Origin: Glycera tridactyla
Lineage: Eukaryota
Assembly (NCBI GenBank): GCA_965644265.1
Contig: OZ286463.1
Span: 78,492,001 to 78,556,000 of the forward strand
DNA length: 64,000 nt
Reading direction: 5' to 3'
Position numbers and translations under genes: made by a program. The notes beneath the pieces are model-generated. The model was not told the DNA's origin. It ran no database searches and saw only the letters and a list, made by a program, of their open reading frames with translations. Shown here one piece after another: positions 1,430 to 39,216 of this stretch; within the stretch, counting starts at the first letter, position 1, and each line of letters begins with the position of its first letter.

Positions 1430-1610
1430 ATAGTTAGCCAGACGGACAGACAATCAGACAGACGAACAGACAGACAGAAAACAGACAGACAGGTGGACAA
1501 ATCGACGGACAGATGGAATGATAGATCCACGAAAGGGTTCGATGGAGACTGGTGGACTGATGGACGGATCGAAGGAGGGATCGAGAGACGGGCAAGAGGT
1601 TAGACTGACA
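1430..1610. repeat. Degenerate (GACA)/(GATG) tetranucleotide array
   Basis: Direct reading. Confidence 0.85.
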
Positions 1611-13365: not shown

Positions 13366-13601
13366 NNNNNNNNNNNNNNNNNNNNNNNNNNNNNNNNNNN
13401 NNNNNNNNNNNNNNNNNNNNNNNNNNNNNNNNNNNNNNNNNNNNNNNNNNNNNNNNNNNNNNNNNNNNNNNNNNNNNNNNNNNNNNNNNNNNNNNNNNNN
13501 NNNNNNNNNNNNNNNNNNNNNNNNNNNNNNNNNNNNNNNNNNNNNNNNNNNNNNNNNNNNNNNNNNNNNNNNNNNNNNNNNNNNNNNNNNNNNNNNNNNN
13601 N
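13366..13601. other. N-gap (others: 31456-31602, 33775-34135, 36333-36498, 38849-38978, 39037-39174, 62031-62206, 62533-62672)
   Basis: Runs of N; ORFs crossing them are artefacts. Confidence 0.99.
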
Positions 13602-20005: not shown

Positions 20006-20670
20006 CTTTTCACATTATTTTGAGGACCCTTGAGCAAAAGTCTCGCATGATCTTTTTCCTGAAGCCTGAAAAATTCATTCATACAATCCACAATCAGACT
20101 TGTGAGAAAGCTGACTATAGAAGCGAAGGAGTCATCCTGGTGGGTTTTCAGGATTTAAGATGAGTAATAGCCGCTGGGAAAGTTGACACCTGCTGGGGGC
20201 ACATCCACACACCGATATTAAATATCTCTCTCATTACTCTACCCATTGTTTCCACCTTCTTCCCTCGCCACTTGTCTGAATGAATCTGGGTCTAGTGTCT
20301 CTAATGAGGATATATTGGAAGCTTTTACTGCCGCCTTTTTGATGTTTGTGAGCCTGACAACGGGGGACCGTACCATTTATGATGTTGTTGTAATTTCTTT
20401 ATTTTGTTTCGTCAATCACCAATAATGTTATACAGTACAGTAAATACAGTAATACAGTAAGGTGTAACAGCATATACCCTCATTATTAAGGGTTTTCTCA
20501 GCCTGACGAAGTAACACATGTGATAACTTTCTATTGACTCACGTGATATGAAGATGAAATAATGGATATGATATATGATGAAATGATATGAGATGAGTTG
20601 GTATGACTGGGACATATTTCTTTAATCTATATTATGTTTCTATGTAACACTTTTCTTTCCATGAAATAAA

Positions 20671-20722
20671 TTTATTTTATTTTATTTTCAGGGAAGTTTC
20701 AAGAAAGAAAATCAACATTTTC
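20671..20722 (-). other. Probable LINE 3' terminus: GAAAAT-GTTG-ATTTTC hairpin, ACTTCCCTG, (AAAAT)3 tail
   Basis: Seen directly ~150-190 nt after the ORF2 stop. Hairpin plus short-repeat tail is the usual L2/CR1-group 3' end layout. Confidence 0.55.
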
Positions 20723-20863
20723 AAAATGAGATTGGAGCAGACACAAGACCAAGTCTAGAGTTATGTTGAAAACAAAATTTCCAATCTATCTTGGATTCAC
20801 ATTTGAGGAAGTTGCTGTTCCATTTTCTGAGAAAAAATTTTCTCTATATTTATAGAAATAAAT

Positions 20864-23782
20864 TTAGATCCAAATGAAATTCTTGAGTTTATTTTTAAAT
20901 TGGTCGTGCTCCATACTCTCATAATCAGGATATTTCCTTACACAGTCATTCCACAGCTTGCTTCCTCTGTATCTAAAATTTCCTTCAGATATTCTACTAG
21001 CTGGTTGTTTTTGTTCCAGGAAGGGTCTATTCAGAGATCTAGTATGATAATGGAAATCTCTAGTATCTGCCATATATTTACATAATGGTTCATACTGAAC
21101 ATGAACATCTCCAGTAAGGATCCGATTTACATGAATCAGGGTGTGATATTGTCTACGACCATCCAGGTATGGCATATCCAGTCTTTCATGTGTTAAAGAT
21201 GACCTTGTACGTGGTTCACATTTTAAAATAATTCTCAAGGCTTTATTTTGAACCCTTTGTAATTTTGTAGAATCTGCCACACCTAGACTGTCGTAGACAA
21301 TATCACAATAATCAAAAATTGGCAAGATAAGGGTCCTGTACAGCATCAGGGACATGTTTTTACTCACTATGCCCCTGAGTCTGCCCAGGACCCCCACCCT
21401 GCTCATAGTCCGATGTCTAATGTCCTCAGCATGTTGCTTGAAACTTAAATTTCTATCCAAAATGATGCCCAAGTATTTAAAACATTCAACTTGTTCAATT
21501 TTCACTCCTTTGAAGGTGATATCAATATTACATCTTTGGGTTTGTGTACGTGTTCCAAAGACCATTATTTTGGTTTTCGACAGATTCAAGCTCAACTTAT
21601 TTCTATCTAACCAAATGCTCACATCCTTTAGTGAGTTTTCTAATTTGCGTTGAACTTGCACCGGATTTCTGTCGGATACCAAAATAGCTGTGTCATCCGC
21701 ATAGAGATTCATACTGGGACCCCTCATATAATAGGGTATGTCATTCACATATATAGTAAATAATAGGGGTCCCAGTATGGATCCCTGTGGGACTCCACAG
21801 TTGATCTCATTTTCAGTTGAGGTAAACCCATTTGCACGTACAGAACATCTACGATTTTTCAAATAGCTCGAGAGCCAGCTATTGCTCTTTTCATCAACTC
21901 CATATTGGCACATTTTCCTCAGTAGGATATCATGGTCTACCGTGTCGAAAGCTTTCTTCAGGTCCAGGAAGAGCACTCCACTGGTACATCCCTTATCTAT
22001 ATTTAAGTACAATTTATCTAGAAATTCCAATAGACATGTTCCAGTGGAGCAGCCCCCCCTGAAACCCGATTGCTCTCGACACAGTAGTCCACTACTTTCA
22101 AAATACGTAGAAATCTGTTTATGCACAATCTTTTCTAAGACTTTGCTAATAGTCGACAATAAGCTTATAGGTCTATAATTAGACTCTAGAGTTCTATTTC
22201 CAGATTTGTATAGGGGTATTATTGTAGCAGTTTTCCATTGGTCAGGGAACACTCCACCATTTATACTCAAATTAAAAATATGACAGATCAGTGGTAATAG
22301 GACTATCATACATTCTTTAACTATTTTTGCTGGCATACCATCATCTCGACTTGATTTTGTAGTTGATAAACTGTTGATAATTTCTGAGATTTCTGCCATT
22401 GTGGTAGGTTTCAGACTGAAAGTATTTTCCAGATGAATCGGGAATATGTCTAAGGGATCAATTCCATCAGTTTGTATTTTCATGCTCAGATTTTTACCCA
22501 CGTTACTGAAGAAATTGTTTAATTTCGTTGATTTCGTTTCATTATCTGTCGCATTGTCAATTTTCAAAATATCCGTCCTGCCTTTATTTTTACCCCAAAA
22601 CATATTTATTGTTTCCCATAATTTCTTGCTATCATGTTGGTTATTCAAAAACATATTGTCAATATATTGACGTTGTAGCGTTCTTTTCAATTTCTTACAT
22701 TTTTTAACTAAATTATCTTTAATTTCTTTATTTTCACTATTGTTATTTTTCTTGAAAGTGGCACAAGCTTTTTGACGATCTTTAATCAAGTCGAGATATT
22801 CACTGGTAAGCCATTTTGGCCAATTATCAGTGACCCGATGTCTTTTCAATGGAATGTTCTTATCTAAAATTTCATTCATAGTTTGATGAAATAGTTCAGT
22901 AGACTTGTTTGTATCAATAGTGGAGTAGAACTCATCCCAATTTTGTTTCAGGATATCCATTTTTAATTTTTCAAAATCTACTTTAGCAAAGTCTTTGAAA
23001 TAAACAAAACTTGACTTTCTAGAGACGGGAATTTTTTTCCTTGCTACTAAGATTAAACTATGGTCCGAAAGACCCGTCTCTAGAACCCCATGTTGGTGGT
23101 ACATCTCAGGATTGTTTACAACAATATGGTCCAATAATGACTTGCTTGTAGAGGTTACCCTTGTATATGTATCAATTAATTGTGTAAGGTTATTCAAATT
23201 CAAAAAACTGTTATAAATGCTCCCTCTATCTTGGGATTTGAAATCTATGTTCATATCCCCTATCAAAACACAATCACACAACCTTTCTGATATCATGTCA
23301 ATATAATTAGCATCCAACCAGTCAATGAAAACACCTATGTTTCCATATGGAGGGCGGTATATACTACCTATAATAATCTTTCTGGTGTTTGGTAAGATCA
23401 AATCAATCCATAATGATTCCACATCCGTAGTACAAATGGCCATGTCTGGTATTACTTGCACTTGCCTATCATTTCGTACATAAATAAGTAATCCCCCTCC
23501 TGCTAGCCTCCGACTTCCTTCATTTCGATCTGATCTTATTATATAATAACCAGAGATTTCCAATTGAGAATCTTTGTGAGAATCATTTAAAAAGGTCTCT
23601 CCTATTACCATGATGTCAATTTTCGTTTCGAGTAGTAACAGTTCGATATCATCAACTTTATTTATGAGACTTCTCACATTGAGGTATGCAATCTTTATCC
23701 CTTTGATGGTATTTATTTCACTAGCAGTTTGCCATTGTAGAGTCTTGTTTCTATATTCACGAGCACCGTGTCGTTCAGTCAT
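20864..23782 (-). CDS. ORF2: apurinic-type endonuclease plus reverse transcriptase, 972 aa
   Basis: APE motifs YLNVRSL, IGETFL, GGGLLIYV, SIYRPP, IGDMNID, LLDHI, SDHSLI. RT motifs YRPISLL, QSGFR, FLDLKKAFDTVDH, GVPQGSILGPLLF, LYADD, KYLGI. C-terminal LPIFDYCD, LQRVQNKALR and KLWN are typical of L2/CR1-group ORF2. No RNase H or CCHC tail seen. Uninterrupted frame. Confidence 0.97.
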   Translation of the reverse strand: MTERHGAREYRNKTLQWQTASEINTIKGIKIAYLNVRSLINKVDDIELLLLETKIDIMVIGETFLNDSHKDSQLEISGYYIIRSDRNEGSRRLAGGGLLIYVRNDRQVQVIPDMAICTTDVESLWIDLILPNTRKIIIGSIYRPPYGNIGVFIDWLDANYIDMISERLCDCVLIGDMNIDFKSQDRGSIYNSFLNLNNLTQLIDTYTRVTSTSKSLLDHIVVNNPEMYHQHGVLETGLSDHSLILVARKKIPVSRKSSFVYFKDFAKVDFEKLKMDILKQNWDEFYSTIDTNKSTELFHQTMNEILDKNIPLKRHRVTDNWPKWLTSEYLDLIKDRQKACATFKKNNNSENKEIKDNLVKKCKKLKRTLQRQYIDNMFLNNQHDSKKLWETINMFWGKNKGRTDILKIDNATDNETKSTKLNNFFSNVGKNLSMKIQTDGIDPLDIFPIHLENTFSLKPTTMAEISEIINSLSTTKSSRDDGMPAKIVKECMIVLLPLICHIFNLSINGGVFPDQWKTATIIPLYKSGNRTLESNYRPISLLSTISKVLEKIVHKQISTYFESSGLLCREQSGFRGGCSTGTCLLEFLDKLYLNIDKGCTSGVLFLDLKKAFDTVDHDILLRKMCQYGVDEKSNSWLSSYLKNRRCSVRANGFTSTENEINCGVPQGSILGPLLFTIYVNDIPYYMRGPSMNLYADDTAILVSDRNPVQVQRKLENSLKDVSIWLDRNKLSLNLSKTKIMVFGTRTQTQRCNIDITFKGVKIEQVECFKYLGIILDRNLSFKQHAEDIRHRTMSRVGVLGRLRGIVSKNMSLMLYRTLILPIFDYCDIVYDSLGVADSTKLQRVQNKALRIILKCEPRTRSSLTHERLDMPYLDGRRQYHTLIHVNRILTGDVHVQYEPLCKYMADTRDFHYHTRSLNRPFLEQKQPASRISEGNFRYRGSKLWNDCVRKYPDYESMEHDQFKNKLKNFIWI

Positions 23783-24478
23783 TAATGAAGATGTGATGAG
23801 AATGAAAATGAAAGTGTGAGTTTCTTAAGATGCGCTAAGTAACTTAGCCTCAAAATTGAAACAAGATGTCAATTTTTACAAAAATAAGAGAGTACATTGA
23901 TCTCTCAAAAATGTTTGCTGTGTGCCCATCCGGGCAGTTACTACAGCTATTCCAATATGAAAAATAATACAGAAGTCGTAGCCTATCAATGAGATGCGAG
24001 CTGGAATAGGTGAGAAAAAATACATGTTATTCGATTTCAGGTGTATCAGTGGTGATATATCAATGATAATATTATCGTGTTTCACATTTCTTGATACATT
24101 GTGAAATATGGGGCAACAATTCGCAAGATCCCTGCCTATACATTTTAATTGGATGTTTAAAAATTTTCAACAAATCAAGAATACAAAATACGAATAAAAA
24201 TAGAATGCAAAAAACTCAAAAGGGACACTAGATATCACTTTATGGCCAAGTGAAATTGACTGGATAACTACTTCATTCAGATACTCTCTCTTGGAGTGAG
24301 GCTCTGACTGGAAATACCACTTCAGCCAGCATTTTAGCCTCTCATCTTATATTCCTGTTGTCTACTTACTTCAGGAGTGATCATAATAAATTAGCCATAA
24401 AAATAATAAGTTCACAATATTTTTCACATTCACAGTTTCCAAAAATAACATGATAATTCGGTTATACATGGTTTAACT

Positions 24479-25135
24479 TGAAACCTTGTATCAGCTTTCA
24501 GAGAGATATGTATCAAAATAATCTCGTTATGATAATTCTAGTTAAAATTCAGCAAGAAGAGTCATATTCCATTTCCCATCTCATTTAGCAAGTAGGGGGA
24601 CCATAGGATATCCAGGAAAGCTCCCTTTTGCATATAGGTTTGGGAAATGTTGGCTGACTTTTAAAATAGATTACTATTTCTAGAATGATGTTGCAAAAAC
24701 ATCTGATATTCTTCCAAAGGAAAGAAAAGACAAGAATTCGATTCCAGATTCTTCTCATAAAATAGCTGGTCACGTCTAAATCTCATCTACAATAATTCTA
24801 GATGGTACGCAGTTTCATCATTTAGAAAAAATATATGAAAAATAATAGCTGATCTCATTTATAACTCATCTACAATAGGTGGAAACTTGTAACAGCTTTC
24901 AAAGAAAAATATAGATAAAGATAATCACGTATGATAAAGCTAGGTAATTTCAGCAAAGAAGAGTCTGTCTCCATATTCCATCTCATACTGCAGGTAGGGG
25001 GACCATAGGATATACAGGAAAAACTCCCTGTTGCATTATGGTTTGGAGAATGTTCACAGACTTTTGAAGAAATGGTTATTTTCTGAAAAAGATTTTCTCA
25101 TTTTCTCATTCTACAAAATCATCTTATATTTCAAA
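24479..25135. repeat. Two diverged ~250 bp direct repeats (about 24479-24725 and 24882-25135) in the LINE spacer
   Basis: Aligned by eye. Shared core GTAGGGGGACCATAGGATA-[TC/TA]-CAGGAAA, plus GAAAC(C)TTGTA.CAGCTTTCA and CAGCAA(A)GAAGAGTC. Confidence 0.85.
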
Positions 25136-25665
25136 GGCAATAGATTCTTTTCAAAAAACAATCTCGTGGTGTACCATTTCTAACTTGAAAGTAATCACCG
25201 GTTTCCATATATCCATAATAAAGGAAATAAAAGTAACTAAAATAGTGGATGATGTTGAAAAGGGGTTGGCAACAATATTTCTCACCTTGAGGACAAGCCA
25301 TGTGCTCCATTTCAATCTGTTAATTTAAAGCTAGAGTATTCACTCTAGGTCCTGCCCCCATTCAATCTGGTGGACCACTGCATATGATAGGAGCATGTGA
25401 GTATGAGGACAGGAATTAGGATTCATGTATAGAACCCCTTAACCAAATTAGAATTTCTTCCAATGCTCATGGCCCTTGTTCTCAAGAAGATACTTTCATA
25501 CTGCTCATTGATGTCTTCCTACAACAATGCAAAAATTGCAATTATTACAATTATCAATAATTCAAAATGAAAATGAACATGAACATACATACAGTCATCT
25601 CAGTTATACTCAACTAGACAAGCCAAGATTCACGCCAGATGACATCCAAAAACTAGCCCACGATA

Positions 25666-26571
25666 TTAATTTCCATACCATAGGTCAAGAATTGGACCTA
25701 TGATTGATAGGGCTAAGCCCTTATTTCCAAGTTCATTGAAATGCACATGGTCATGTGTGAACATACCTGACATAATATCACCGTGTGGGCATGGTTTTTT
25801 TCCCTTGTTTCTTCTGCCTCCCAACCTTCTGCGTGTGTATTTGAAGGTATTTGTTGGACTGGGAGTCTTGAAAGACTTTACAAACATGTGGTGTGTATGT
25901 ATGAAGTGCATTGCGATGTCAATTCTTTTGAAATGATTTCTGACGAAATTGTCCACCCATAGTGCCAAGACTCTACTCTCTTCGTCCCATTTTGGTCTCC
26001 AAGTAATAGGAATGTGACAGAATTCTGTATGTGGAAAGTATTTGTTCAGGAAAAGTATAGCCAAATGTATACGCATGCTTAGTTGTGCAAACCATTCATG
26101 CCTTAAAGAGGTGATCCTCTTCCTCTGTATTCTGGGATCTCTAGACCATGTTTTGATGCCTTTGACTTTGGTGTTAAACTTGTCAATGTCATTTGAGCCC
26201 AGAATTATCAGGATGTAGTTTGCAGCTATTTGTTCATCAATAATTTTTTGCATGGTATTCCCATACCGCCTGAATTTTTTTGCACCCTCAGGAGTATCCG
26301 CAAATATACCCTGAATTTCGTCAACAAATGTCAGCCATTTACCACCACCTATACCTTTATAGGACCAGTTTCTCAAGATGGTCTTTTGGTGGTTGTCTTC
26401 TGGTAGATTCTTCACATATGTCTGGAGACGGGCAACATGACTGCTTCCAAGTACTAACACATCCGGGACTCCGTATGTATCAATTTGATGTCGCCTTCTA
26501 TATACTGGGTCCTTCTCATAGGTCCACGATACCCGCGCTTCTGCAGCGATTCTTGCTAGACCTGAATTTGC
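25666..26571 (-). CDS. SGNH/GDSL-family esterase frame, 301 codons, no own AUG; probably a spliced exon
   Basis: Block I VLGSSH, block II GIGGG, block III LGSND, block V DHVH. I translated 37 more open codons upstream of the tracked GTG (ANSGLARIAAEARVSWTYEKDPVYRRRHQIDTYGVPD) up to the TAG at 26574-26572, which is also the AG of a splice acceptor. Confidence 0.85.
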   Translation of the reverse strand, partial: ANSGLARIAAEARVSWTYEKDPVYRRRHQIDTYGVPDVLVLGSSHVARLQTYVKNLPEDNHQKTILRNWSYKGIGGGKWLTFVDEIQGIFADTPEGAKKFRRYGNTMQKIIDEQIAANYILIILGSNDIDKFNTKVKGIKTWSRDPRIQRKRITSLRHEWFAQLSMRIHLAILFLNKYFPHTEFCHIPITWRPKWDEESRVLALWVDNFVRNHFKRIDIAMHFIHTHHMFVKSFKTPSPTNTFKYTRRRLGGRRNKGKKPCPHGDIMSGMFTHDHVHFNELGNKGLALSIIGPILDLWYGN

Positions 26572-26612
26572 CTATGGAAAATAAAGAAAATTTTGCGATC
26601 ACATTTAGTCAA
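26572..26612 (-). promoter_or_regulatory. 3' splice site at the start of the esterase frame
   Basis: TTGACTAAATGTGATCGCAAAATTTTCTTTATTTTCCATAG|GCA: branch-point-like TTGAC/CTAAA, polypyrimidine tract and YAG. Confidence 0.7.
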
Positions 26613-26993
26613 TTTTATGGTATTTTATTTTATTTATGTGAATAATATCCAATTCATTATTTTTTATCTATATTTGTAGGCACTTTCCTGTTATTTATAC
26701 GTATAATATTTCCCTTACATTAATTTATGTTTGTAGACACTTTCCCGCCATAAGTATCAGATTCCATTTAAGGTATATTACTAGAGAGGGAGAGAGGGAG
26801 ATTATTTGAGAGGGGGGGTAGAGATTGCATATTGGGGTTTTGGAGAAATTTGAGATGTTAATTCTTCTTTCTGAGAGATTTCACCACGGCCGGTTACCAT
26901 TAATTATTCTACCAGTTACTATGATACCATTTGGTTTTTACTGTTTATATTGCCGTGTCATTCCGACTTGCGGATACTATTCCGGTCGTCCGG

Positions 26994-27359
26994 TCAAAAG
27001 GTTACGGCGCCCATGGCGTATCTGAACTGGTGTTTAAAGTCGATTTGCGCCTCGTCTAGCAATCTATCATTCACTACATACATTCCAATTACACCTACCT
27101 CATTGCAGTAGCCTAGTTTAATGTCTAGGTTTCTTCTATGACTTATGTTTATGGCGTGCAGCGACATTTTCGACTCAAAGTAAGCGGAGAATTGTTGCCA
27201 TGCTCTCCCGGTTTCGATATGTTGATCATGCGCACACGGCGTGACCTCATTTGACACGGCCTGTTCGATATGCCGGTGTTCTACCACGACGGTTGAACTG
27301 ATAGTTTTCGCCGCGACCTGCTCCTGGTCTTTTTCCTGGTGTAGGCAAAGGTGGGTATT
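26994..27359 (-). CDS. Possible small overlapping frame (~120 codons) at the ORF1 3' end, no recognised domain
   Basis: The tracked 97-aa ORF extends upstream to an in-frame TAG near 27360. First ATG is at 27167. Contains a phase-0 GAG|GTAGGT donor at 27099|27098. Confidence 0.3.
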   Translation of the reverse strand, partial: NTHLCLHQEKDQEQVAAKTISSTVVVEHRHIEQAVSNEVTPCAHDQHIETGRAWQQFSAYFESKMSLHAINISHRRNLDIKLGYCNEVGVIGMYVVNDRLLDEAQIDFKHQFRYAMGAVTF

Positions 27360-29004
27360 CTATATTATCTCTAGGGTTATTTTGTCCGAATTGAAGTTTT
27401 GACTGTACTAATAATTTGGTTTCCTGTTGTTTTCTTTCTATCTCTTTTTCAATTTGTTTTAGGGTTGGATCCAACTTTTGTTTTTGTTTTTGCTCCGGGT
27501 CTTTTTGTTTATTTTTTGATTTGGTTTTCCTTTTTGGTAGCTCAAAATCCTGAAATTCTGTGGGCATTCTTGTGACATCAGTTATAATTGTATCATCTTG
27601 ATTGGCTTGCACAACTTCTGCTTTCTCAAGGTCGGTGCTCCCATCTCCCTCATTACTTAGACCTACCTCTATATCTTTACATTGTTCAAGATTATGTCCT
27701 CCCTTCAATATTGCATTAACTAGGGAATTGTGGTCCTTTATCAGAATCCTGTCACCTTCCTTTCCATGGGACACATAGACCCTCCCATCTTGTGTCCATA
27801 CATTGACTAGGAGCCCATGTCTCTTTGCTTCTCTTGCTTGCCTGAAAAGATTCCCCTCCCAAGGTGTCAAATGCTCCCTAACAAAATAATTGCTCCCTCT
27901 AAGTTTCCCCTTTTGTTTCAATATGTTCCTTCGCATGCCTGGGTTGCATAGTCTTATTTTAACAGCTCTTGGTTTGTCAGGATAACTTGGGCCATATCTG
28001 AAGGCTATGCAGATGTCATCTGATGTCAATCGTAAGTTTGTCTTAGTATTGAAAAAATCCACCACTTGCTCATGCAGGGTCTTTTCCTTTGACAAAGGAA
28101 GGCCATCCAATATAATGACCCCTAGTCGTTCTATCTTTTGGAGAGTATCTACATCAAGCTCTGATTGTCCAATCCTATCCTCGTGGTCATTTACTATTAT
28201 GATAATGTTCTCTACTTTCTCTTTCAATTGATCAAATTCCTCCCTGGTTATTGCACTCACCATCCTTTTGTCTCCGCCTCTTTTCTTCAGGTCTTCTAAT
28301 TCTTTTGCAGTTTCCTCCGCAAATTTCGTTATTCTTCCTTGAAGATTGTTTATAGTTGAATGTTGGTCTTGAACGATGTCTACAAGTTTCTGATGTTCTG
28401 TTAGGAGGTCTTGTCTACATCTTTCGGTGCTGTCCTCTATTGTGGATTCGACATATCGTTCCATGTCTATTCTACTTGATTTGTGGTATTGAACTAGTTT
28501 TTCTTTAATTCGAGTGTCTACATAATGTTCCATATATTGTTTCCACCCACTCTGTGGTTCTGTTGATGAAATAGACTTTGCACTGCTGGGCATATTAACT
28601 GTTTGACTTGTATCACTTATTGTTCTCTCCGTCACGCCTGGTTTCTCAACCACGCCGTGTTCCGCTTCACTGGCCGTGTCGTCTGATTCCGACGAGTTTT
28701 CGTCTATCCCGTCACGCTCCACGCACACTGAATCGTCACCAAATACTACCTGGCTATCATGGCTGCTCGAAGGTACCATCTCGTTCTCGAAACTTTCAGT
28801 TCCCATTTTTTGCTGAGTGGAAGTAACGAATGGTTCGCAAGGGCCAAAAGGCTCCAAGTTTTCATCATTTTGATTGATTTCCATTTTTAAAGGCGTATCA
28901 AAACTTCCTTTGGGCCTTTTCACCGTTTTACTTGCAGCCTCTTGATCAGGAGTTAGTTGATGGTATTTACGGCCCTTCTGTACATTCACCGGTGTGGCAG
29001 CCAT
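27247..29004 (-). CDS. ORF1p, 585 aa: acidic disordered N-terminus, coiled coil, RRM, L1-ORF1p/FP-like C-terminal domain, basic tail
   Basis: Heptad-rich segment (~aa 190-295). RRM-like GVIILDGLP ... AFRYG..KPRAVKIRL. CTD-like YFVREHLTP..LFRQAREAK..VWTQDGRVYV. These patterns are typical of LINE ORF1 proteins, and the frame lies upstream of ORF2 on the same strand. Confidence 0.9.
   Translation of the reverse strand: MAATPVNVQKGRKYHQLTPDQEAASKTVKRPKGSFDTPLKMEINQNDENLEPFGPCEPFVTSTQQKMGTESFENEMVPSSSHDSQVVFGDDSVCVERDGIDENSSESDDTASEAEHGVVEKPGVTERTISDTSQTVNMPSSAKSISSTEPQSGWKQYMEHYVDTRIKEKLVQYHKSSRIDMERYVESTIEDSTERCRQDLLTEHQKLVDIVQDQHSTINNLQGRITKFAEETAKELEDLKKRGGDKRMVSAITREEFDQLKEKVENIIIIVNDHEDRIGQSELDVDTLQKIERLGVIILDGLPLSKEKTLHEQVVDFFNTKTNLRLTSDDICIAFRYGPSYPDKPRAVKIRLCNPGMRRNILKQKGKLRGSNYFVREHLTPWEGNLFRQAREAKRHGLLVNVWTQDGRVYVSHGKEGDRILIKDHNSLVNAILKGGHNLEQCKDIEVGLSNEGDGSTDLEKAEVVQANQDDTIITDVTRMPTEFQDFELPKRKTKSKNKQKDPEQKQKQKLDPTLKQIEKEIERKQQETKLLVQSKLQFGQNNPRDNIEYPPLPTPGKRPGAGRGENYQFNRRGRTPAYRTGRVK
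27661..27669 (-). promoter_or_regulatory. Phase-0 5' splice site inside ORF1 after codon 446
   Basis: ATA GAG|GTAGGT (KDIE|VG); frame checked against the ORF1 start at 29004. Confidence 0.5.
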
Positions 29005-29218
29005 GTGCGATTTGGTCGTAATCCTATCAATGCCGTGTGGATTCGATAATAATGTCCAACACTCGCCTTTTAACTAGCGGCTCGTTATCCCATTCAATGT
29101 CTGCGTATTCTATATACACTCCTACGTTGTTTGCAAATCCATTTATCGCCGTATCATTGTCCAGGACGGGCACACGCTTCTACATCGTCGAGAGAAATTA
29201 GATCGGCGTTCGTCTCAC

Positions 29219-29230
29219 GTCGCCATCTTG
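29219..29230 (-). promoter_or_regulatory. YY1-like site at the presumed 5' end of the LINE (internal promoter)
   Basis: Minus strand reads CATTT-CAAGATGGCGAC, matching the YY1 core AAGATGGC found near the 5' end of L1 elements. About 220 nt upstream of the ORF1 ATG, in CpG-rich sequence. Confidence 0.55.
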
Positions 29231-32049
29231 AAATGATATGCGAAGTACCTGATATTCTCACCTACATTAGATAAATTCTGTTTGTTACATTCCTCATGTT
29301 TCTACTCACGCATGTAGTGTCGCTATATTATCACTACTGAAGCTGATATCCTTACTATCATACTCCATAGGAGGTACACGCTCATAATTTCGCCCATCAG
29401 TTATACAAACCCTGTCAATTGCTTCATCAATTGAAGGAAACGGAATGTTACGAAGTGGATTCTCCACAAGCTCTCTCCGATGATCGATAAAAATGACTTG
29501 TAATATTAGTTCGTAGTGGAGAATGATCATATGGTATTGAGGATCACACGAATTAGTGATACTCCAAGCCATATTCTAGGGCAAGACAACTGTGTGGCCA
29601 CCTTTGGATTCTATGACTGGTTTCATTTGTTGTTATCGACGGGGAGGCAAGGCATTTTAACACAATGGGTTAACTCTGCTAACCTGACTCTCCGTATCCG
29701 TACCTGTACTACATTGGCAAAGTACTCTGTATGAATCGGGGCTTTGGGCATGAGTGCCATTCTCAACCAGTTATATAGATATGCCCTCAGTTGAATGATT
29801 TGTAACACCGTATGTAGGTACAGCTACTCTTATTTGATAATGCTCTCGGTCCCCCAACACCTTGTGATCGGGGTTTAGAGATCCTGTGGGGGAGGACAGA
29901 AGATCCAGCTCTCATAGATCAGAAACGTAAGTACGTGATCACTCGTTCAGCTCCCACTCAGTTGAGAGTCTAAATCTGTGTATTCATACTGTTGAATTGT
30001 GTTCATCTGGATTTAATCAAAGCTATGCTGCAAATGTGTCCGTGAGGACTATGGGTATAGGAACCCATGTACAGGTGTGATTGGTAGTATGCGTGCTCAA
30101 AGTTACATCGCCGAGATATGTCAGGTATAAAGTTGGACCAAGGTCCTACTTTGTTGACCCTCTGACCCCAGACCTCTTGTGGGGTGGTTGAGACTACTTG
30201 ATGAGTCACGCCTGGCTTGCTTTATAAGTTGATACATAAGGACTGCTATTACCAAAGTGGCTCGTATGACTACTTCTTCCGACATACCTGTCATACTCTA
30301 TAGTTTATTCACAACTGTTATTCTACAGGCGCTACATTCGAGTTCTTAACCCTCGCAATATGCCAGTGTATACCTCACTTCGTATCAGACAATTTATGCT
30401 CTCCAGCAGCAAATACTCGACATCGTAAATTTAATAGTCCGCATTCTATCTGACATCCTGATTGTTGGCTGAGTCAATCATCATGAGAGTTTGTCAGATA
30501 TGATGTTGATTGGTCAGAGTGGTGGAGGGTCATCAAGTTGGACAGATGAATTTGTGCTTGCAACAATATCTTTTTGTGAATCATCAAATCTGGCACACTT
30601 CTCAACCATTCTTTCATTCTCCTTTCATTCTCAAGAAAAATCTGGAAACTATAATAACATTCAACGTATGGCATTTTATCTACAAATATGTCGCAATGTA
30701 CGTGCCACTAGGCATACTCATGATTGGCCATTTTGCCTTTCAAAACCTCTTTTCTAAACTGGTATGCCTAGTAGCTCTATAACCTGAAGTGTATCACTTC
30801 GATAGTTGACCAAAGGTTGTATCATAGAAGATATCAACTGTCCACCCACTTTCTCACTGAATAAATTTATACTGTGAAAATGGCTAACCAGTTGGCAACC
30901 TTGGCAACGACAAGGACATATTCATGTCCGACAGGTGGCAGTGCCACGACAGTTCATGACGAACGATATGTATCGTATATTGCTTGTATCGTAGGAACAT
31001 ATCAAGGTCGCGCTAACCTTGAGAAGGTGCTGGGGAGGAGGGGGGATCTTGTTGTCAGCCGTGAATGGGAAGAAGTACTCGCATTCACCGCTTATATACT
31101 GCGACCACGGCGCCCTCTACACATCAACCAAATTCTGAAAAACGAATCTTTTTCTCATTAGATCACATCGAGAAAAAATATCACAATTCATTATTAATAC
31201 TCCGAATTCATTCCTTTTCATATCTCAAATCGTTATGTTATGATGAATCAATTTCTAAAAACTGCTGCCATCTCGTGTGAAATTCTGTCGTAACTCCCCC
31301 CCCCCCCCCCTAAATAAATTCCCAATATTTTCTATCACAAAAACAATTTTATTCTCAAAAATCAACTTCCTTTCCCGCGTGAATGAGATTCATTGATTTT
31401 CCCACAATCCAGAATACCAATGCTTCGCTGTTCTCGTATTCGGGGATACTAGCCCNNNNNNNNNNNNNNNNNNNNNNNNNNNNNNNNNNNNNNNNNNNNN
31501 NNNNNNNNNNNNNNNNNNNNNNNNNNNNNNNNNNNNNNNNNNNNNNNNNNNNNNNNNNNNNNNNNNNNNNNNNNNNNNNNNNNNNNNNNNNNNNNNNNNN
31601 NNTTATCCCTCCCATGACGTATATGGCAGCTTTTTTTTTCTGATCAATTGATTTGGATCGAATCGAATTGAATTCAGGAGAATTCACTGTCTGATCGACC
31701 GCTTCCCAGTTCACATGGTTTCTGTTGGTGATTATAGTAATTGTCATTACAATTCGTAATTCCACTTGCGGCTCGTGAGACGTGAAAAAAATGTCATCCT
31801 CTTCAGGACAGTGGCCCATCATTGTTATATAATATATACCCGATATTACTCATCATAAAGTATCATCGCTATGGTAAATACCAGGAAGTGGTAAGAGGAA
31901 GTGTGTTCTCGAAAACCCCTCTTCCGGTTTTGGGATGTGTTTGTGCGTGGTCCAACATATAATTTAACTCCCACCCTGTAAGATGATTGAGCCATTATTT
32001 ACAAACTCGTGGAAGGAACTCTAATTCCTCTAGTATTTGTGTTGAATAT

Positions 32050-33569: not shown

Positions 33570-34262
33570 TCAAATGTCATCATTATTGCATCATTCTTTT
33601 TCCATCGAACTCATTATGATCATCATCATTTTGATACATTCAACCGATGTCAGCGCTATATGGATCACTCTCAGCGTCAATACCATTGTTATGAATATTC
33701 ATATCACAATCTCTATTGTTGTCATCATTACCAATACCATTATCATTATTACTATCATCAACATTGTTATTACCNNNNNNNNNNNNNNNNNNNNNNNNNN
33801 NNNNNNNNNNNNNNNNNNNNNNNNNNNNNNNNNNNNNNNNNNNNNNNNNNNNNNNNNNNNNNNNNNNNNNNNNNNNNNNNNNNNNNNNNNNNNNNNNNNN
33901 NNNNNNNNNNNNNNNNNNNNNNNNNNNNNNNNNNNNNNNNNNNNNNNNNNNNNNNNNNNNNNNNNNNNNNNNNNNNNNNNNNNNNNNNNNNNNNNNNNNN
34001 NNNNNNNNNNNNNNNNNNNNNNNNNNNNNNNNNNNNNNNNNNNNNNNNNNNNNNNNNNNNNNNNNNNNNNNNNNNNNNNNNNNNNNNNNNNNNNNNNNNN
34101 NNNNNNNNNNNNNNNNNNNNNNNNNNNNNNNNNNNTTATTAGTATCATTATTATTATTATCATCATTATTATTATTATTATTATTGTTATTATTATTATG
34201 ATCATTATTATCATTATTAGTATCATTATTATTATTATCATTATTATTATTATTATTATTAC
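33570..34262. repeat. (ATT/ATC)n tract spanning an N-gap (33775-34135)
   Basis: Direct reading. Confidence 0.9.
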
Positions 34263-35224
34263 ACCGCCGTCTTCATGGTCATTGAAATCAGCATCATCTC
34301 AGACCCTGGTCCTCATGCAATATATCCTCCATTTCCGCGTATTTGCAGTCGACAGTGAGATAGTTGAAGAGGATAGGACTGTAAACAGTTGTGTAAACAG
34401 TCATTACACGTTCTACACTCGCACATTGATATTCTCACAGAATGTAAACAGATAGCAACTCCGCCTGATAGACTCAACAATGCTCTCCAATTATCTTCTG
34501 CTATGTATTTCTCTTCCCTGATCTACCGAGGACACCCATAGATACCAAATCTTCCGACAGTCCAAACCCTATATCACCCTAATCAATATCGATCAAAGAC
34601 TCCAATCAAATGAGGATAGTGGAGATGGTGGCGATGTACTATGCTTGTATCGGGTTTTATATGTTGATGGCGTGACTACAGAAACTTCTCGTTGCTGTGT
34701 GAAATATGATGATAAAAGTGTTCAATATCCTTGTTACATCAGTAGCTAATACAGAGCAACAACGACCAGGGACCCTTCCAGCGAAATAAGTATCTATCCG
34801 GTATACAGACCCCTCTAATGTATGATTTTGTTTCACCATTGAACCATGCACTCGATTCCCGAATTTTCCTTGCCAGATACAATGGCTGGTTTTGTGGTGT
34901 TTACATGCGACTCCTATCTGTGTGCTGTGCTGATGGTAATGTCTGAGCTTTCTAAATGGCGTGGTTGACGTGATCTCATCTAGGTACTAGGTCAATATTG
35001 GCTCAGATTGCTACCCGACATCTGTTTCTCTTTAACTACTTACCCTCAGAGACAACCTTCGAACTAACATTCAAAATAGTTCGAAGTGGGACCGGCTCTG
35101 GTAACACTGTATTCCAGGGTTCCCCCAAGATGATGCAATACATGAGAAAATATGTCTCATTGTGTTGGTCTGGCCAGAGATAAGGACAGTGATAGAAACT
35201 ACCGAGAATAATGCCGAGTCTTGA

Positions 35225-35510
35225 TAGTGGTGGTTGCGGTGATAATTGTGGTGGTGATTGGTAGTGGGTTCGGAGTTCGCAGTGGTGGTGACTTCGTTGG
35301 TGGTGGTAATGACAAAGATGGTGGTGGTAATGACAAAGATGGTGATAGTGATGAAGATAGTTGTGGTGCTGGTGGTGGTGATCATGATGATAATGGTGAT
35401 AGAGATGGTGGTGATGATGATGATGATGATGCCGACAGTGAAGATGCTGATGGTTATGGTGGTACTGAGTATGGTGCTGGTGCTGGTGATGCGTCTTGTG
35501 GTGCTGGTGT
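35225..35510. repeat. (GGT/GAT)n low-complexity tract
   Basis: Direct reading. Confidence 0.9.
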
Positions 35511-37029
35511 TTTCTCGAAGAGAATGTTCATCCCACCCGTCCTTCATTTAACGGTCATGGAGCTCTTCAAGATAATTGTTTATCTCATGAGCATGGCCTC
35601 CGAAGGAGCTGGGCTGGATTAAATTGCGTGCAGTGGGGATAGTTGTCAGCCCCAGTGCTGGAATATACGTGCATTTTATATGTCTGGATGTTTGCAAGGA
35701 AGGCAGGTATACTGATCAGAGAGAAGCTGGACTTCTGGTGGATGATCGGAGAGACATGGAGGATCATCGTAGTTCTACTTCTCACCCGCGTTGCTCGCCA
35801 TGGGAATATTCGCGATAAGATCGATGACGTAATGGGATAAATGAAATAGTCAACAACATAAGACCATTGTGTCAATTACATAAAGCTTCATAATGCGTAT
35901 ATTTGCTGATCCTCCCGAGTATTCATTGTGGCAACCCGGTGATGAACACTACTCCACATATTTGCATAAAGCGTTGGATGTATACCATGTGTGCCTTAGG
36001 CCAACACCAACCCTCTACACAGCAGATATACCGATGTTGTGTTTAGACCTTACCATGTCCTTTCAAAAAGCAACATTCATTAATGGTCTTGTCCACTGCT
36101 CATCTATCCATCCCTTATCAAATGTAGCATCTGTGTCAGTACGTTACTTATAAGCTCAATCTCAAAATAGCTGTCTGTCTGTGTCTGACTATCTGTCTGG
36201 TCGGATGAATAGCTAATCGGCTCACTTGGTAGTTGAACGTATGACACTCCACCTAGCTGCCAGATAGACGGGAGGTTGGCCAGGTAGATGGGTGTTGGCC
36301 AAATAGATGGATTAGGTGGATAGACGAATGAANNNNNNNNNNNNNNNNNNNNNNNNNNNNNNNNNNNNNNNNNNNNNNNNNNNNNNNNNNNNNNNNNNNN
36401 NNNNNNNNNNNNNNNNNNNNNNNNNNNNNNNNNNNNNNNNNNNNNNNNNNNNNNNNNNNNNNNNNNNNNNNNNNNNNNNNNNNNNNNNNNNNNNNNNNGG
36501 AAATAGGTTTGGATGGATGGACGAGTGGTAGGGTGGATTGATAGACGAACGGACGGGCGGGCGGACGGATGGATGAGCCATTAGTTTTCTACCCTCGAAC
36601 AGAATAAGGATTATAGGCCAGCTGTGACAAGGATGGCGCGAAGCAGGGGTCCTGAAATGAACGTGTGGTATGAATACCTGCAGAGTATCCAGCATCATGA
36701 GATTGAAGATAAGCAGATCCGGCAGAATGCAAGTATGTCCAGGGCATTGCTACCAGAAATCTAGGGTAGTGCCTGAGTCACGAAGCTGTGTGGAGCTCCA
36801 TCCTACGGAGAACACTTCCACAACCTGCAACCCCGATACCTGGACTGACTTAAGTCTCAAGTTGAAATTGATTGATGCTTGGGTACATATCTTCATAAGA
36901 TATAGTCACAGCTCACAAGTTGTGGCTGGAGGACGCAGCACAATCAGACAATAGTCCCTACATATTTGCATAATTGGAGGCTTGTGAGATCACATGACAG
37001 GACAACCAAATAGGCCATGGTTCATTCCA

Positions 37030-37605
37030 CCCTGGTCCTCCGGTGATTGATTATTGTGACAAAGCATACGACTCTATGTCTGTGAATGACTCTCATAGGC
37101 TACAAAGGCTACAAAATGCAGCCTGCAGAATAATTTTGCAAGCCGATCCTTTGTGAAGCATCACTGAGATGCATCCAGAATTAAGCCTAGATTATTCGAA
37201 AATGAGACGTCACGAACATTTGTGCTCAATAGTTTATCAGGGAGTACACGTCCCAATTCCCCTTCCTTAAATGGTCTATATACCCGTAGGGTGCCTAGTC
37301 AAGGACCGATCACCAGCCAGCAGATAAGGAATTTCCTTGATATTCCAGCATCGCTCTACATCAAAGGAGTGTTCCTATATGACATGCAACTCATCATTCA
37401 ATATACACCTTCTAGGTCAACTCCGCGTATATCCTGGTGCTTAATCAGAGATAACCGGATATAACTTTACTCCTTTTTGTGATATTGTTTTCTACTGAAG
37501 TACGATTGTCATGATTCATCTATGACAGGGAGATGAGTTTGTAATTCATCTCAAACAGCAAATATTTTTGAAGCCTTTTGAAGCCTTTGAAGCCTTAAGC
37601 CTCCA
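37030..37605 (+). mobile_element. Degenerate 5'-truncated L2/CR1-group LINE 3' fragment
   Basis: Translates to IDYCDKAYDSMSVNDSHRLQRLQNAACRIILQADP*, aligning with FDYCDIVYDSLGVADSTKLQRVQNKALRIILKCEP of the intact ORF2. Ends in a GAGATGA...TCATCTC hairpin and a (TTTGAAGCC)n tail. Confidence 0.8.
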
Positions 37606-38789: not shown

Positions 38790-39216
38790 TGCATGAATGA
38801 CAGATAGACGGATGGACGAACGAACAGACTTATGGACGGACAAATTGANNNNNNNNNNNNNNNNNNNNNNNNNNNNNNNNNNNNNNNNNNNNNNNNNNNN
38901 NNNNNNNNNNNNNNNNNNNNNNNNNNNNNNNNNNNNNNNNNNNNNNNNNNNNNNNNNNNNNNNNNNNNNNNNNNNNNNTACGGTCAGACAGACTGACTGG
39001 AGGACGGACGGACAGAAGGATTTACAGATGGAGGGANNNNNNNNNNNNNNNNNNNNNNNNNNNNNNNNNNNNNNNNNNNNNNNNNNNNNNNNNNNNNNNN
39101 NNNNNNNNNNNNNNNNNNNNNNNNNNNNNNNNNNNNNNNNNNNNNNNNNNNNNNNNNNNNNNNNNNNNNNNNNNGGATGGATGAATCAACAAACAGGTGT
39201 ATGGATAGACGGACGG

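What the first reader, a model, noticed from the sequence alone, without database searches (positions are those of the whole stretch)
20671..29235. Candidate intron-containing, alternatively spliced LINE with three cistrons (ORF1, esterase, EN-RT)
Seen: three large intact frames separated by AT-rich spacers of ~0.7 kb and ~1.9 kb. The spacers are bounded on the sense strand by donor/acceptor motifs: 27666 or 27098 to 26572; 25678 to 25519; 25285 to 24001. Known: L2/CR1-group LINEs are normally bicistronic and intronless, and their SGNH esterase is normally part of ORF1p (Kapitonov and Jurka 2003; Schneider et al. 2013, ZfL2-1 esterase). Inference: splicing would rebuild a conventional ORF1p-esterase plus ORF2 mRNA, while unspliced RNA must be the retrotransposition template because the DNA copy keeps the spacers. 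That is a complex-retrovirus-like expression strategy in a non-LTR element.
Basis: partly seen in the sequence, partly recalled or inferred. Interest (0 to 1): 0.9.

Follow-up and report, generated by a model that had tools for sequence, protein, structure and literature searches.

The report
Three-gene LINE; splicing unproven
This is a full-length, intact-looking jumping gene (LINE) with three genes instead of the usual two, a layout that distant relatives share; the proposed splicing rests on sequence motifs alone and stays untested.

Summary
On the minus strand lie three intact frames: ORF1 (585 aa), an SGNH-esterase frame (301 codons) and EN-RT ORF2 (972 aa). They are separated by 675 nt and 1,883 nt without coding capacity.

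The three-cistron layout is real. Two distant relatives (L006/L012, with ORF2 37% identical, and L007) keep the order ORF1, esterase ORF, and (where the contig reaches) spacer and ORF2. The window element starts with the same 8-mer, AGATGGCG, as the L006 family.

Splicing is not shown. Points for it:
- The esterase frame has no ATG before its catalytic serine.
- That frame opens exactly at a strong acceptor motif.
- Two phase-0 donors lie upstream. One follows a 23-codon ATG mini-exon that starts 80 nt after the ORF1 stop; the other follows ORF1 codon 446.

Points against it:
- Equally good ATG-to-donor configurations arise in 32% of simulated spacers.
- Two of the three best donor motifs sit inside essential coding sequence.
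- The second proposed exon hits a stop after 11 codons.
- No other copy and no transcript could be reached.

Verdict: a new variant of a known kind (a tricistronic CR1-group-like LINE). The retrovirus-like splicing scheme is an open hypothesis, not a finding.

The parts
20591..29228 (-). Whole element, 8.6 kb. The 5' end is firm. The 3' end is either 20591 (just before the second copy of the 12-nt repeat) or 20671 (the edge of the (AAATA)n run).
   Evidence: The 5' terminal 8-mer is shared with the L006/L012 family. The 12-nt direct repeat was reached in 5 of 500 shuffles. No second copy lies in the window.
29229..29240 (-). Candidate target-site duplication, 5' copy (CATATCATTTCA).
   Evidence: The 3' flank is itself a low-complexity run of similar words, so the significance is overstated.
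20579..20590 (-). Candidate target-site duplication, 3' copy.
29005..29228 (-). 5' UTR of 224 nt, starting with AGATGGCG. This is the only occurrence of that 8-mer in the window.
   Evidence: The L006 element starts with the same 8-mer right after a flanking A-run, and contig L012 begins with it.
27247..29004 (-). ORF1, 585 aa, intact. It has an acidic N-terminal part, a long helix (coiled coil), an alpha/beta region and a basic lysine/arginine-rich tail.
   Evidence: tblastn finds weak but real similarity to the ORF upstream of ORF2 in L002, L006 and L007 (E 1e-4 to 1e-6). The AF2 single-sequence model has pLDDT 56, with a 90-residue helix followed by beta/alpha elements. There is no Pfam or PDB match.
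26572..27246 (-). Spacer A, 675 nt, between the ORF1 stop and the opening of the esterase frame.
   Evidence: It has 14-22 stops per frame.
27099..27167 (-). Candidate leader mini-exon: an ATG 80 nt after the ORF1 stop, then 23 codons, ending on a codon boundary at the donor motif GAG|GTAGGT.
   Evidence: Homology to the relatives' leaders was tested exon by exon and is not significant.
26572..27098 (-). Intron-like intervening stretch of 527 nt, with GT...AG borders and 14/17 pyrimidines before TAG|G. It shows no terminal inverted repeats and no duplication at its borders.
25666..26571 (-). Esterase frame, 301 codons plus stop, an SGNH hydrolase. The blocks are GSSH (residue 42), GIGGG (73), GSND (125) and DHVH (274). 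The first Met is at residue 107, and the frame opens exactly at the acceptor's TAG.
23783..25665 (-). Spacer B, 1,883 nt, with 52 ATG triplets on the sense strand. It is the only T-rich part of the sense strand. It holds two diverged copies of a roughly 400-nt unit (24479-24665 and 24880-25068, 78% identical).
20864..23782 (-). ORF2, 972 aa, intact. The APE-type endonuclease spans residues 34-241 (23060-23683), the reverse transcriptase spans residues 533-775 (21458-22186), and YADD is at residue 694.
20591..20863 (-). 3' UTR, with (AAATA)n at 20671-20688.
27658..27669 (-). Donor-like motif in ORF1 after codon 446 (GT at 27666-27665), in phase 0. It is the same 9-mer, GAGGTAGGT, as at 27101-27093. 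These are the only two occurrences in 128 kb of both strands.
24001..24020 (-). Acceptor-like motif (15/17 pyrimidines, CAG|C) 218 nt upstream of the ORF2 ATG. Two ATG triplets lie between it and that ATG.
25285..25678 (-). The stretch between 25518 and 25286 meets a stop after 11 codons in the implied phase.

Best explanation
The region is one full-length, intact-looking copy of an APE-type non-LTR retrotransposon from a lineage absent from the searchable protein collections.

Layout (shown). The element has three cistrons: an ORF1 with a coiled coil and an alpha/beta region, a separate SGNH-esterase cistron, and an EN-RT ORF2. The two spacers belong to the element and are not nested insertions.

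Esterase expression (inferred). In this copy the esterase frame cannot be translated from an AUG on unspliced RNA with its catalytic serine included. The most economical route is removal of one intron-like 527-nt stretch (27098 to 26572, GT-AG). That would join a 23-codon AUG leader, which starts 80 nt after the ORF1 stop, to the esterase frame. The result would be a cistron laid out like those of the relatives, where the ATG lies 146 nt after the ORF1 stop in L006 and the leaders run 63-68 residues. The alternative donor at 27666 could instead give an ORF1(1-446)-esterase fusion.

ORF2 expression (inferred). ORF2 lies behind 1.9 kb holding 52 ATG triplets. It is probably read from a separate RNA that either starts inside spacer B, which carries two 400-nt repeat units, or is spliced to the acceptor at 24001.

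Template (inferred). Unspliced full-length RNA would remain the template for copying, because the DNA copy keeps both spacers.
For: - One element: a single 5' end motif shared with the L006/L012 family, a candidate 12-nt duplication at both ends, and no second 5' motif inside the element.
- Layout shared by relatives: L006/L012 run ORF1, esterase ORF of 783-784 aa with its own ATG, a 1.1-kb spacer, then ORF2 of 971 aa (37% identical to the window's). L007 runs ORF1-like ORF, then an esterase ORF of 621 aa.
- The two L006-family contigs come from two assemblies. They are 99.7% identical over 9.65 kb, keep the spacer (3 differences in 1,096 columns) and end in (ATA)n runs of different length.
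- Esterase identity: 67 relatives in the sensitive search, all four SGNH blocks kept, AF2 pLDDT 88.9, and GDSL, PAF-AH and sialate-esterase folds at E 4e-6 to 1e-3.
- Need for a non-standard start: the first Met is at residue 107, after blocks I and II.
- The esterase frame opens at an acceptor that ranks in the top 3% of same-size windows on that strand. L006 has its best local acceptor (top 6%) 12 nt before its esterase ATG.
- Both donors are in phase 0.
- The borders of the 527-nt stretch show no inverted repeat and no duplication.
- Spacer B carries 52 ATG triplets and a tandem unit. Repeat arrays in 5' UTRs of CR1-group elements are described in PMC13343379.
Against: - No RNA evidence and no second copy of this family could be obtained.
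- An ATG-to-donor phase-0 mini-exon of this quality arises in 32% of simulated spacers.
- Donors of 7/9 occur once per 492 nt.
- Two of the three best donor motifs on the sense strand (8/9) lie inside ORF1 and inside the esterase core, where use would destroy coding sequence.
- The antisense strand has more acceptor-like sites than the sense strand.
- The leader mini-exon shows no significant similarity to the relatives' leaders.
- Acceptor strength upstream of the esterase is unremarkable in four of six loci. My own Fisher combination of the six fractions gives about p = 0.05.
- On general grounds, an efficiently spliced intron in a LINE should be lost, because spliced RNA is itself a template. 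In human L1, splicing yields defective copies (PMC5860796).
Confidence: 0.45

Rival explanations
1. It is the same tricistronic LINE, but with no functional splicing. The splice-like motifs are chance matches in A/T-rich sequence. In this particular copy the esterase cistron is defective: broken once, lacking a usable start. ORF1 and ORF2 remain intact. The long spacers are plain intercistronic sequence, and ORF2 is read from an internally started RNA.
For: - The motif statistics are weak.
- Relatives have continuous esterase ORFs with their own ATG.
- The esterase is dispensable in some settings: PMC13343379, citing Kajikawa et al. 2012, states that transposition appears not to depend on esterase activity.
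- A young copy keeps open frames whatever its function.
- Introns should not persist in LINEs (established knowledge; SpIREs, PMC5860796).
Against: - The interruption has no hallmark of a transposon insertion: no inverted repeats, no duplication and no tail.
- Its borders coincide with a consensus-like GT and with a rare-quality acceptor placed exactly at the frame opening.
- Everything else in the copy is intact, including 301 esterase codons with all catalytic residues.
Confidence: 0.33
2. The element runs a retrovirus-like programme of alternative splicing with three introns. This programme yields an ORF1p-esterase fusion and brings ORF2 close to the 5' part of the mRNA, while unspliced RNA is the template.
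For: - The donor at 27666 is in phase 0 and lies just after the folded part of ORF1.
- The identical 9-mer occurs at both alternative donors and nowhere else in 128 kb.
- The acceptor at 24001 is of one-per-12.8-kb quality and leaves only two ATG triplets before the ORF2 ATG.
Against: - The middle exon ends in a stop after 11 codons.
- The donor at 25678 scores 6/9 and the acceptor at 25519 scores 11/17, both at background level.
- No relative has ORF1 fused to the esterase.
- None of the esterase ORF1ps in Repbase carries an RRM (PMC3905857).
- There is no RNA evidence.
Confidence: 0.12
3. The region is a composite: two elements side by side (an ORF1+esterase unit and an ORF2-only LINE with a long 5' UTR), or one element with nested insertions forming the spacers.
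For: Spacer B differs in strand composition from the rest, being T-rich on the sense strand. It also carries a tandem unit like the 5' UTR arrays of ORF1-less CR1-group elements (PMC13343379).
Against: - The same gene order, with a kb-size spacer before ORF2, is kept in a family whose ORF2 is only 37% identical.
- The window holds only one 5' terminal motif.
- The spacers have no internal tails, duplications or inverted repeats at their borders.
- No piece of either spacer recurs elsewhere in the window.
Confidence: 0.07

Closest known systems
Esterase-type (type IV) ORF1 LINEs of the CR1 and L2 clades, e.g. zebrafish ZfL2-1 (Kapitonov and Jurka 2003; Schneider et al. 2013, PMC3905857; Metcalfe and Casane 2014, PMC4120745)
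   Same: Both are APE-type LINEs that carry a catalytically complete SGNH esterase upstream of EN-RT. The nearest solved folds include PAF-AH-type hydrolases. A basic tail follows the esterase domain in one relative (L007).
   Different: In those elements the esterase is ORF1p itself, preceded by a coiled coil, and no esterase ORF1p in Repbase carries an RNA-binding fold (PMC3905857). Here the esterase is a second cistron behind a separate ORF1. The ZfL2-1 esterase did not come back in sequence, profile or fold searches of the PDB, so direct kinship is not shown. PMC4120745 found esterase ORF1 only in vertebrate subgroups; the nearest named ORF2 relatives here are from a sea cucumber.
Unnamed family in contigs L006 (GCA_013332675.1) and L012 (GCA_029979705.1), and contig L007 (Logan ERR12120952)
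   Same: They share the order ORF1-like ORF, esterase ORF and (in L006/L012) a kb-size spacer and ORF2 of 971 aa. They also share the 5' terminal AGATGGCG and a microsatellite at or near the 3' end.
   Different: - Identity is 37% for ORF2, 27% for the esterase and about 25-28% for ORF1.
- Their esterase ORFs have their own ATG, no intervening stretch, and long low-complexity tails (783 and 621 aa).
- In L006 the ORF1 region is broken once; in L012 the gene calls show it in three pieces.
- L006 has no tandem unit in its spacer.
CR1-group elements with Tnp22-like (type II) ORF1, e.g. L2 and CR1 subgroups and Daphne (PMC4120745, PMC13343379)
   Same: ORF1 has a long coiled coil followed by an alpha/beta region, and the element is A-rich on the sense strand.
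   Different: Pfam Transposase_22 is not matched by ORF1 or its relatives. Human L1 ORF1p appears only at rank 46 (E 0.08) with a low-confidence model. Those elements have no esterase cistron.
Intra-element splicing of human L1 and SpIREs (Larson et al. 2018, PMC5860796)
   Same: Donor and acceptor motifs lie inside a LINE transcript. Spliced RNA would be a possible template.
   Different: In L1, splicing removes needed sequence and gives defective copies. Here the proposed splice would be needed to express a cistron.
Penelope-like elements that keep spliceosomal introns, and rotifer LTR elements and PLEs with a GDSL ORF3 (PMC4209133, PMC5408684)
   Same: These are retroelements with retained introns, or with a GDSL esterase captured as an extra ORF.
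   Different: They belong to other classes: PLEs use a GIY-YIG endonuclease, and LTR elements have LTRs and an integrase. The present element has APE endonuclease plus RT and no LTR.

Membership tests
APE-type non-LTR retrotransposon (LINE) | A single ORF with an N-terminal apurinic-type endonuclease followed by reverse transcriptase | tested here: met
   Pfam gives Exo_endo_phos at 3.9e-12 (residues 34-241) and RVT_1 at 1.8e-38 (residues 533-775). YADD is at residue 694. The word search found 271 relatives, all with this architecture.
APE-type non-LTR retrotransposon (LINE) | No long terminal repeats; flanking target-site duplication; simple-repeat or A-rich 3' end | tested here: inconclusive
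   There are no long direct repeats at the ends. A 12-nt direct repeat flanks the element (5 of 500 shuffles), but it lies in a low-complexity flank. The (AAATA)n run sits 80 nt inside that repeat, so the exact 3' end is open.
CR1 group (CR1, L2, Daphne, Crack and others) | Placement of the RT domain within the group in a phylogeny with reference elements | not testable with these tools
   No Repbase or Dfam references can be fetched here. The named hits carry only automatic labels.
CR1 group (CR1, L2, Daphne, Crack and others) | Microsatellite 3' tail instead of poly(A) | tested here: inconclusive
   The L006/L012 family ends in (ATA)n of variable length. The window has (AAATA)3.6 near, but possibly not at, its 3' end.
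Type IV (esterase) ORF1p | The esterase domain is part of the first ORF product, preceded by a coiled coil | tested here: not met
   The esterase frame is separated from ORF1 by 675 nt with stops in all frames. In L006, L012 and L007 it is a separate ORF with its own ATG.
SGNH/GDSL hydrolase superfamily | Four blocks with catalytic Ser, Gly, Asn and His (plus Asp) | tested here: met
   GSSH (42), GIGGG (73), GSND (125) and DHVH (274) are aligned with 19 relatives.
SGNH/GDSL hydrolase superfamily | Flavodoxin-like SGNH fold | tested here: met
   The AF2 model has pLDDT 88.9. Foldseek against the PDB gives 52 matches at E <= 0.001, and the named natural ones are GDSL lipases, PAF-AH, and sialate or acetyl esterases. 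TM-scores are moderate (0.4-0.6).
SGNH/GDSL hydrolase superfamily | Pfam Lipase_GDSL at the curated cut-off | tested here: not met
   The score is 14.4 bits against a cut-off of 23.6 (E 0.043). The family profile against the PDB gives GDSL at E 0.0026 and PAF-AH at 0.02-0.1.
L1-type ORF1p (Transposase_22: coiled coil, RRM, CTD) | Sequence or fold match to the RRM and CTD of L1 ORF1p | tested here: inconclusive
   There is no Pfam hit for ORF1 or its three relatives and no PDB sequence hit. The model has pLDDT 56, and 2yko appears only at rank 46 with E 0.08. The coiled coil is predicted.
Spliceosomal intron (for 27098-26572) | GT-AG borders, pyrimidine tract, exon phases that keep the frame | tested here: met
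   The motifs alone are not beyond chance, since 32% of simulated spacers give an equivalent leader-plus-donor.
Spliceosomal intron (for 27098-26572) | Junction seen in RNA, or splice sites conserved among diverged copies or homologues | not testable with these tools
   No transcript data are available. No other copy lies in the window or in any collection. The relatives lack the stretch.

The most novel reading that the evidence does not exclude
A non-LTR retrotransposon lineage needs the host spliceosome to express its genes. In it, an intron inside the esterase cistron, with two alternative 5' splice sites, yields either a free esterase or an ORF1p-esterase fusion. The fusion would combine an RNA-binding-type ORF1 with the lipid-directed esterase, a pairing Schneider et al. 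2013 reported as never seen. ORF2 would be read from a spliced or internally started subgenomic RNA, while only unspliced RNA is copied.
Probability: 0.15. Interest if true: 0.85.

Novelty: new variant of a known kind. Interest (0 to 1): 0.55.

Why it matters
LINE biology is built on a two-gene model with short gaps between the genes and no need for splicing. Three points make this element of interest.

- Two ORF1 types in one element. It carries an ORF1 of the coiled-coil type together with a separate, catalytically complete esterase cistron. The literature treats these two ORF1 types as alternatives (PMC3905857, PMC4120745). This offers a natural case for asking what the esterase adds to an element that already has a packaging protein.
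- Unexplained ORF2 translation. Kilobase-size spacers full of ATG triplets lie before ORF2 both here and in the L006 family. The usual termination-reinitiation picture cannot explain ORF2 translation in this lineage, so some other route (internal start of transcription, splicing or internal ribosome entry) must exist.
- A possible retained intron. If the 527-nt stretch proves to be a working intron, it would be a rare case of an intron retained in a LINE, and it would raise the question of how spliced RNA is kept from being copied.

Tried and rejected
- Close relatives. Word-based protein searches with ORF1 and the esterase found nothing. The exact look-up of ORF1 and ORF2 found neither in the collection. 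The metagenome scan with ORF2 gave only two remote fragments. Copy-to-copy comparison for this family was therefore impossible.
- Context of the best ORF2 hits. L001, L003, L004 and L013 gave truncated elements or elements without an esterase.
- Homology of the leader mini-exon. I tested it exon by exon with two profiles of the relatives' N-terminal leaders. The peptide ranked 41st of 2,395 with 2.2 bits, so there is no support. By-eye resemblances, such as a basic RR pair at matching spacing, were dropped as evidence.
- No joined exons. Phases were worked out by arithmetic and each exon was translated by reference.
- Intron position shared by relatives. In L010 and L011 the esterase frames also open without an ATG just after a TAG. 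Their acceptor scores are ordinary (fractions 0.15 and 0.37), and those contigs show no LINE context.
- ORF1 fold. The single-sequence model was too poor for a verdict. A profile of four ORF1 relatives hit only a NADAR structure, through L002.
- 3' UTR comparison with L006. No usable similarity was found.
- Source organism. Rfam and tRNA scans were empty. Other ORFs in the window gave no Pfam family. Assembly accessions were not found in papers, except for Holothuria leucospilota.
- Nested-insertion reading of the spacers. I rejected it for lack of border repeats and because relatives keep a spacer.
Full report
**1. What is there**

On the minus strand of 20.6-29.2 kb lie three long intact frames:
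- ORF1, 29004-27247, 585 aa.
- A 301-codon frame, 26571-25666.
- ORF2, 23782-20864, 972 aa.

ORF2 has an APE-type endonuclease and a reverse transcriptase (Pfam 3.9e-12 and 1.8e-38) and carries YADD at residue 694. The gaps between the frames are 675 nt and 1,883 nt, with 14-43 stops per frame. They are only slightly AT-richer than the ORFs: GC 0.378 and 0.338, against 0.414, 0.412 and 0.357.

**2. The middle frame is an SGNH esterase**

Pfam alone is below threshold (Lipase_GDSL, 14.4 bits, E 0.043). The PDB sequence search gave nothing relevant. The sensitive search of 1.84 billion representatives found 67 relatives, 15 of them at E <= 1e-10.

In an alignment with 19 of these relatives, the four SGNH blocks are kept. 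In the window protein they are GSSH at residue 42, GIGGG at 73, GSND at 125 and DHVH at 274. An AF2 model built from that alignment has pLDDT 88.9. Foldseek against the PDB returns GDSL lipases, PAF-AH subunits, and sialate and acetyl esterases at E 4e-6 to 1e-3. The family profile hits a GDSL protein (E 0.0026) and PAF-AH.

The ZfL2-1 esterase, which I had in mind as the comparator, did not come back in any of these searches. Specific kinship with the known LINE esterases is therefore not shown.

**3. One element, full length**

The 8-mer AGATGGCG occurs once in the window, at 29228-29221. The related element in L006 starts with the same 8-mer directly after a flanking A-run, and contig L012 begins with it. 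By my count from the alignment, 13 of the first 18 bases agree.

A 12-nt direct repeat (CATATCATTTCA) lies at 29240-29229 and again at 20590-20579. Only 5 of 500 shuffles reached that length. The 3' flank is itself made of similar short words, so this figure is optimistic. An (AAATA)n run lies at 20671-20688, and the L006 family ends in (ATA)n of different length in its two copies. The 3' end is therefore either 20671 or 20591.

Nothing else in the window resembles the element, apart from a 60-aa RT fragment of another LINE at 37040-37219.

**4. The three-cistron order is a property of the lineage**

None of the best ORF2 hits from the word search exceeds 34% identity. The only named ones are from the sea cucumber Holothuria leucospilota.

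Following the esterase relatives led to contig L006. It carries an ORF1 region (420-3277, broken once by a frameshift), an esterase ORF of 783 aa with its own ATG 146 nt after the ORF1 region, a 1.1-kb spacer, and an ORF2 of 971 aa that is 37% identical to the window's. tblastn also links its ORF1 region to the window's ORF1, at E 1e-6.

L012, from another assembly, is 99.7% identical to L006 over 9.65 kb. It keeps the spacer (3 differences in 1,096 columns) and has a longer (ATA)n tail. L007 has an ORF1-like ORF followed by a 621-aa esterase ORF before the contig ends.

In both relatives the esterase domain is followed by a long low-complexity tail. That tail occupies the place that is non-coding spacer B in the window.

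So the separate esterase cistron and a kilobase-size gap before ORF2 are inherited features, not nested insertions. The spacers themselves show no inverted repeats or duplications at their borders.

**5. The splicing hypothesis: what speaks for it**

- The esterase frame has no ATG until residue 107, after blocks I and II. It cannot be reached from ORF1 by read-through or frameshift, because all frames of spacer A are closed.
- The frame opens exactly at TAG|G, preceded by 14 pyrimidines in 17. Sites of that quality occur once per 4.1 kb, and this one ranks in the top 3% of same-size windows on that strand.
- Two donors with the identical 9-mer GAGGTAGGT lie upstream. These are the only two occurrences in 128 kb of both strands.
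- One donor follows ORF1 codon 446, just after the folded part of ORF1.
- The other donor follows a 23-codon frame that starts with an ATG 80 nt after the ORF1 stop.
- Both donors end on codon boundaries and are in frame with 26571.
- With the second donor the esterase would have a 64-residue leader before block I. Eight relatives with their own ATG have 63-68.
- The distance from the ORF1 stop to the esterase ATG would also resemble that in L006.
- In L006 the best local acceptor-like site lies 12 nt before the esterase ATG, in the top 6%.

Phases were derived by arithmetic and each exon was handled by reference.

**6. The splicing hypothesis: what speaks against it**

- Donors of this score occur once per 492 nt.
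- In simulated spacers of the same length and dinucleotide make-up, an ATG-initiated phase-0 mini-exon ending in an equally good donor appears in 32% of cases.
- Of the three best donor motifs on the sense strand (8/9), one lies in the ORF1 coiled coil and one inside the esterase core, where use would be destructive.
- The antisense strand has 11 acceptor-like sites against 5 on the sense strand.
- The leader mini-exon shows no significant similarity to the relatives' leaders.
- Acceptor strength before the esterase is ordinary in four of six loci.
- The second proposed exon (25518-25286) meets a stop after 11 codons in the implied phase. Junctions 25678/25519 and 25285/24001 build no longer frame.
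- The only point in favour of those last two junctions is that the acceptor at 24001 (15/17, once per 12.8 kb) leaves two ATG triplets before the ORF2 ATG, instead of the 52 in the whole spacer.
- On established grounds, an efficiently spliced intron in a LINE should disappear, because spliced RNA can itself be copied. In human L1, splicing produces defective copies (PMC5860796).

**7. What could not be done**

Neither is reachable here:
- There is no copy in the window.
- No protein of the family is in the collections.
- There are no close loci in the metagenome scan.

**8. Mechanism, as far as it can be stated**

Shown:
- It is a full-length LINE with three intact frames.
- The layout is conserved.
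- The esterase is catalytically complete.
- The esterase frame has no start codon of its own.
- ORF2 lies behind 1.9 kb holding 52 ATG triplets.

Inferred:
- The esterase is expressed after removal of the 527-nt GT-AG stretch. The alternative is that this copy's esterase cistron is dead (one break).
- ORF2 is read from a separate RNA, either started in spacer B or spliced to 24001. Spacer B has two 400-nt units, like the 5' UTR arrays described for CR1-group elements (PMC13343379). It is also the only sense-strand T-rich part of the element.
- Full-length unspliced RNA is the template.

**9. Comparison with what is known**

The literature sorts ORF1 into types. L1-like ORF1 (coiled coil, RRM, CTD) and esterase ORF1 are treated as alternatives (PMC4120745). 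Schneider et al. state that no esterase ORF1p in Repbase carries an RRM or any other RNA-binding fold (PMC3905857). GDSL esterases as extra ORFs are known from rotifer LTR elements and Penelope-like elements (PMC5408684), and retained introns from Penelope-like elements (PMC4209133).

I found no description of a LINE with ORF1, a separate esterase cistron and ORF2. The library is not complete, and Repbase could not be searched.

Whether ORF1 here is truly of the L1 type stays open, with no Pfam or PDB match and a poor model. Placement in the CR1 group rests on the microsatellite tail and the esterase, not on a phylogeny.

**10. Verdict**

- The real and fairly new thing is the tricistronic layout, shared by at least three lineages.
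- The intron in the esterase cistron is a reasonable hypothesis, at roughly even odds against a dead cistron.
- The wider retrovirus-like scheme is unsupported.

**Note on handling**
- Tool tables shown to me list the pieces of the broken ORF1 regions in relatives. While working, I roughly located the frameshift of one relative's ORF1 in my own reasoning. I give only counts here.
- The runs of N in the window were left untouched.

Noticed in passing
L002:8404-9567 and L014:6593-8476: LINE relatives of the window's ORF2 (both from sample ERZ25767047) carry an ORF1 with a coiled coil and a C-terminal NADAR domain. Pfam PF08719 scores 7.6e-20 in L002 and 5.8e-5 in L014, and a profile hits PDB 8bau. 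I found no mention of a NADAR domain in a LINE ORF1 in the papers read.
   Followed up: partly
L014:8703-9413: Between ORF1 and ORF2 of this LINE lies an SGNH-like segment, with serine, GxN and DxxH blocks visible by eye (Pfam Lipase_GDSL E 0.035). It is not hit by the profile of the window's esterase family, so it is possibly an independent capture. The ORF1 region of that copy is broken, so whether the segment is fused or separate cannot be told.
   Followed up: partly
window 27669-27661 and 27101-27093 (minus strand): The 9-mer GAGGTAGGT occurs only at these two places in both strands of the window, 568 nt apart. The next six bases also agree at four positions.
   Followed up: partly
window 23783-25665: Spacer B is the only part of the element whose sense strand is T-rich (AT skew -0.08, against +0.12 to +0.32 elsewhere). 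It holds two copies of a roughly 400-nt unit, 78% identical.
   Followed up: partly
window 37040-37219 (+): A 60-aa fragment of another LINE's reverse transcriptase, 47% identical to ORF2 residues 821-880.
   Followed up: no
window 35074-35547 (-): A 158-aa ORF with a sub-threshold Pfam match (17.5 bits, cut-off 25) to a viral glycoprotein family. I took it as chance and did not pursue it.
   Followed up: no
L010:583-1413 and L011:128-1006: Two esterase relatives in short metagenome contigs also have frames that open without an ATG just after a TAG, upstream of a conserved leader. No LINE genes are visible around L010.
   Followed up: partly
window, eight runs of N (13366-13601, 31456-31602, 33775-34135, 36333-36498, 38849-38978, 39037-39174, 62031-62206, 62533-62672): Masked stretches or gaps. 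They were left as they are. None lies in the element.
   Followed up: no
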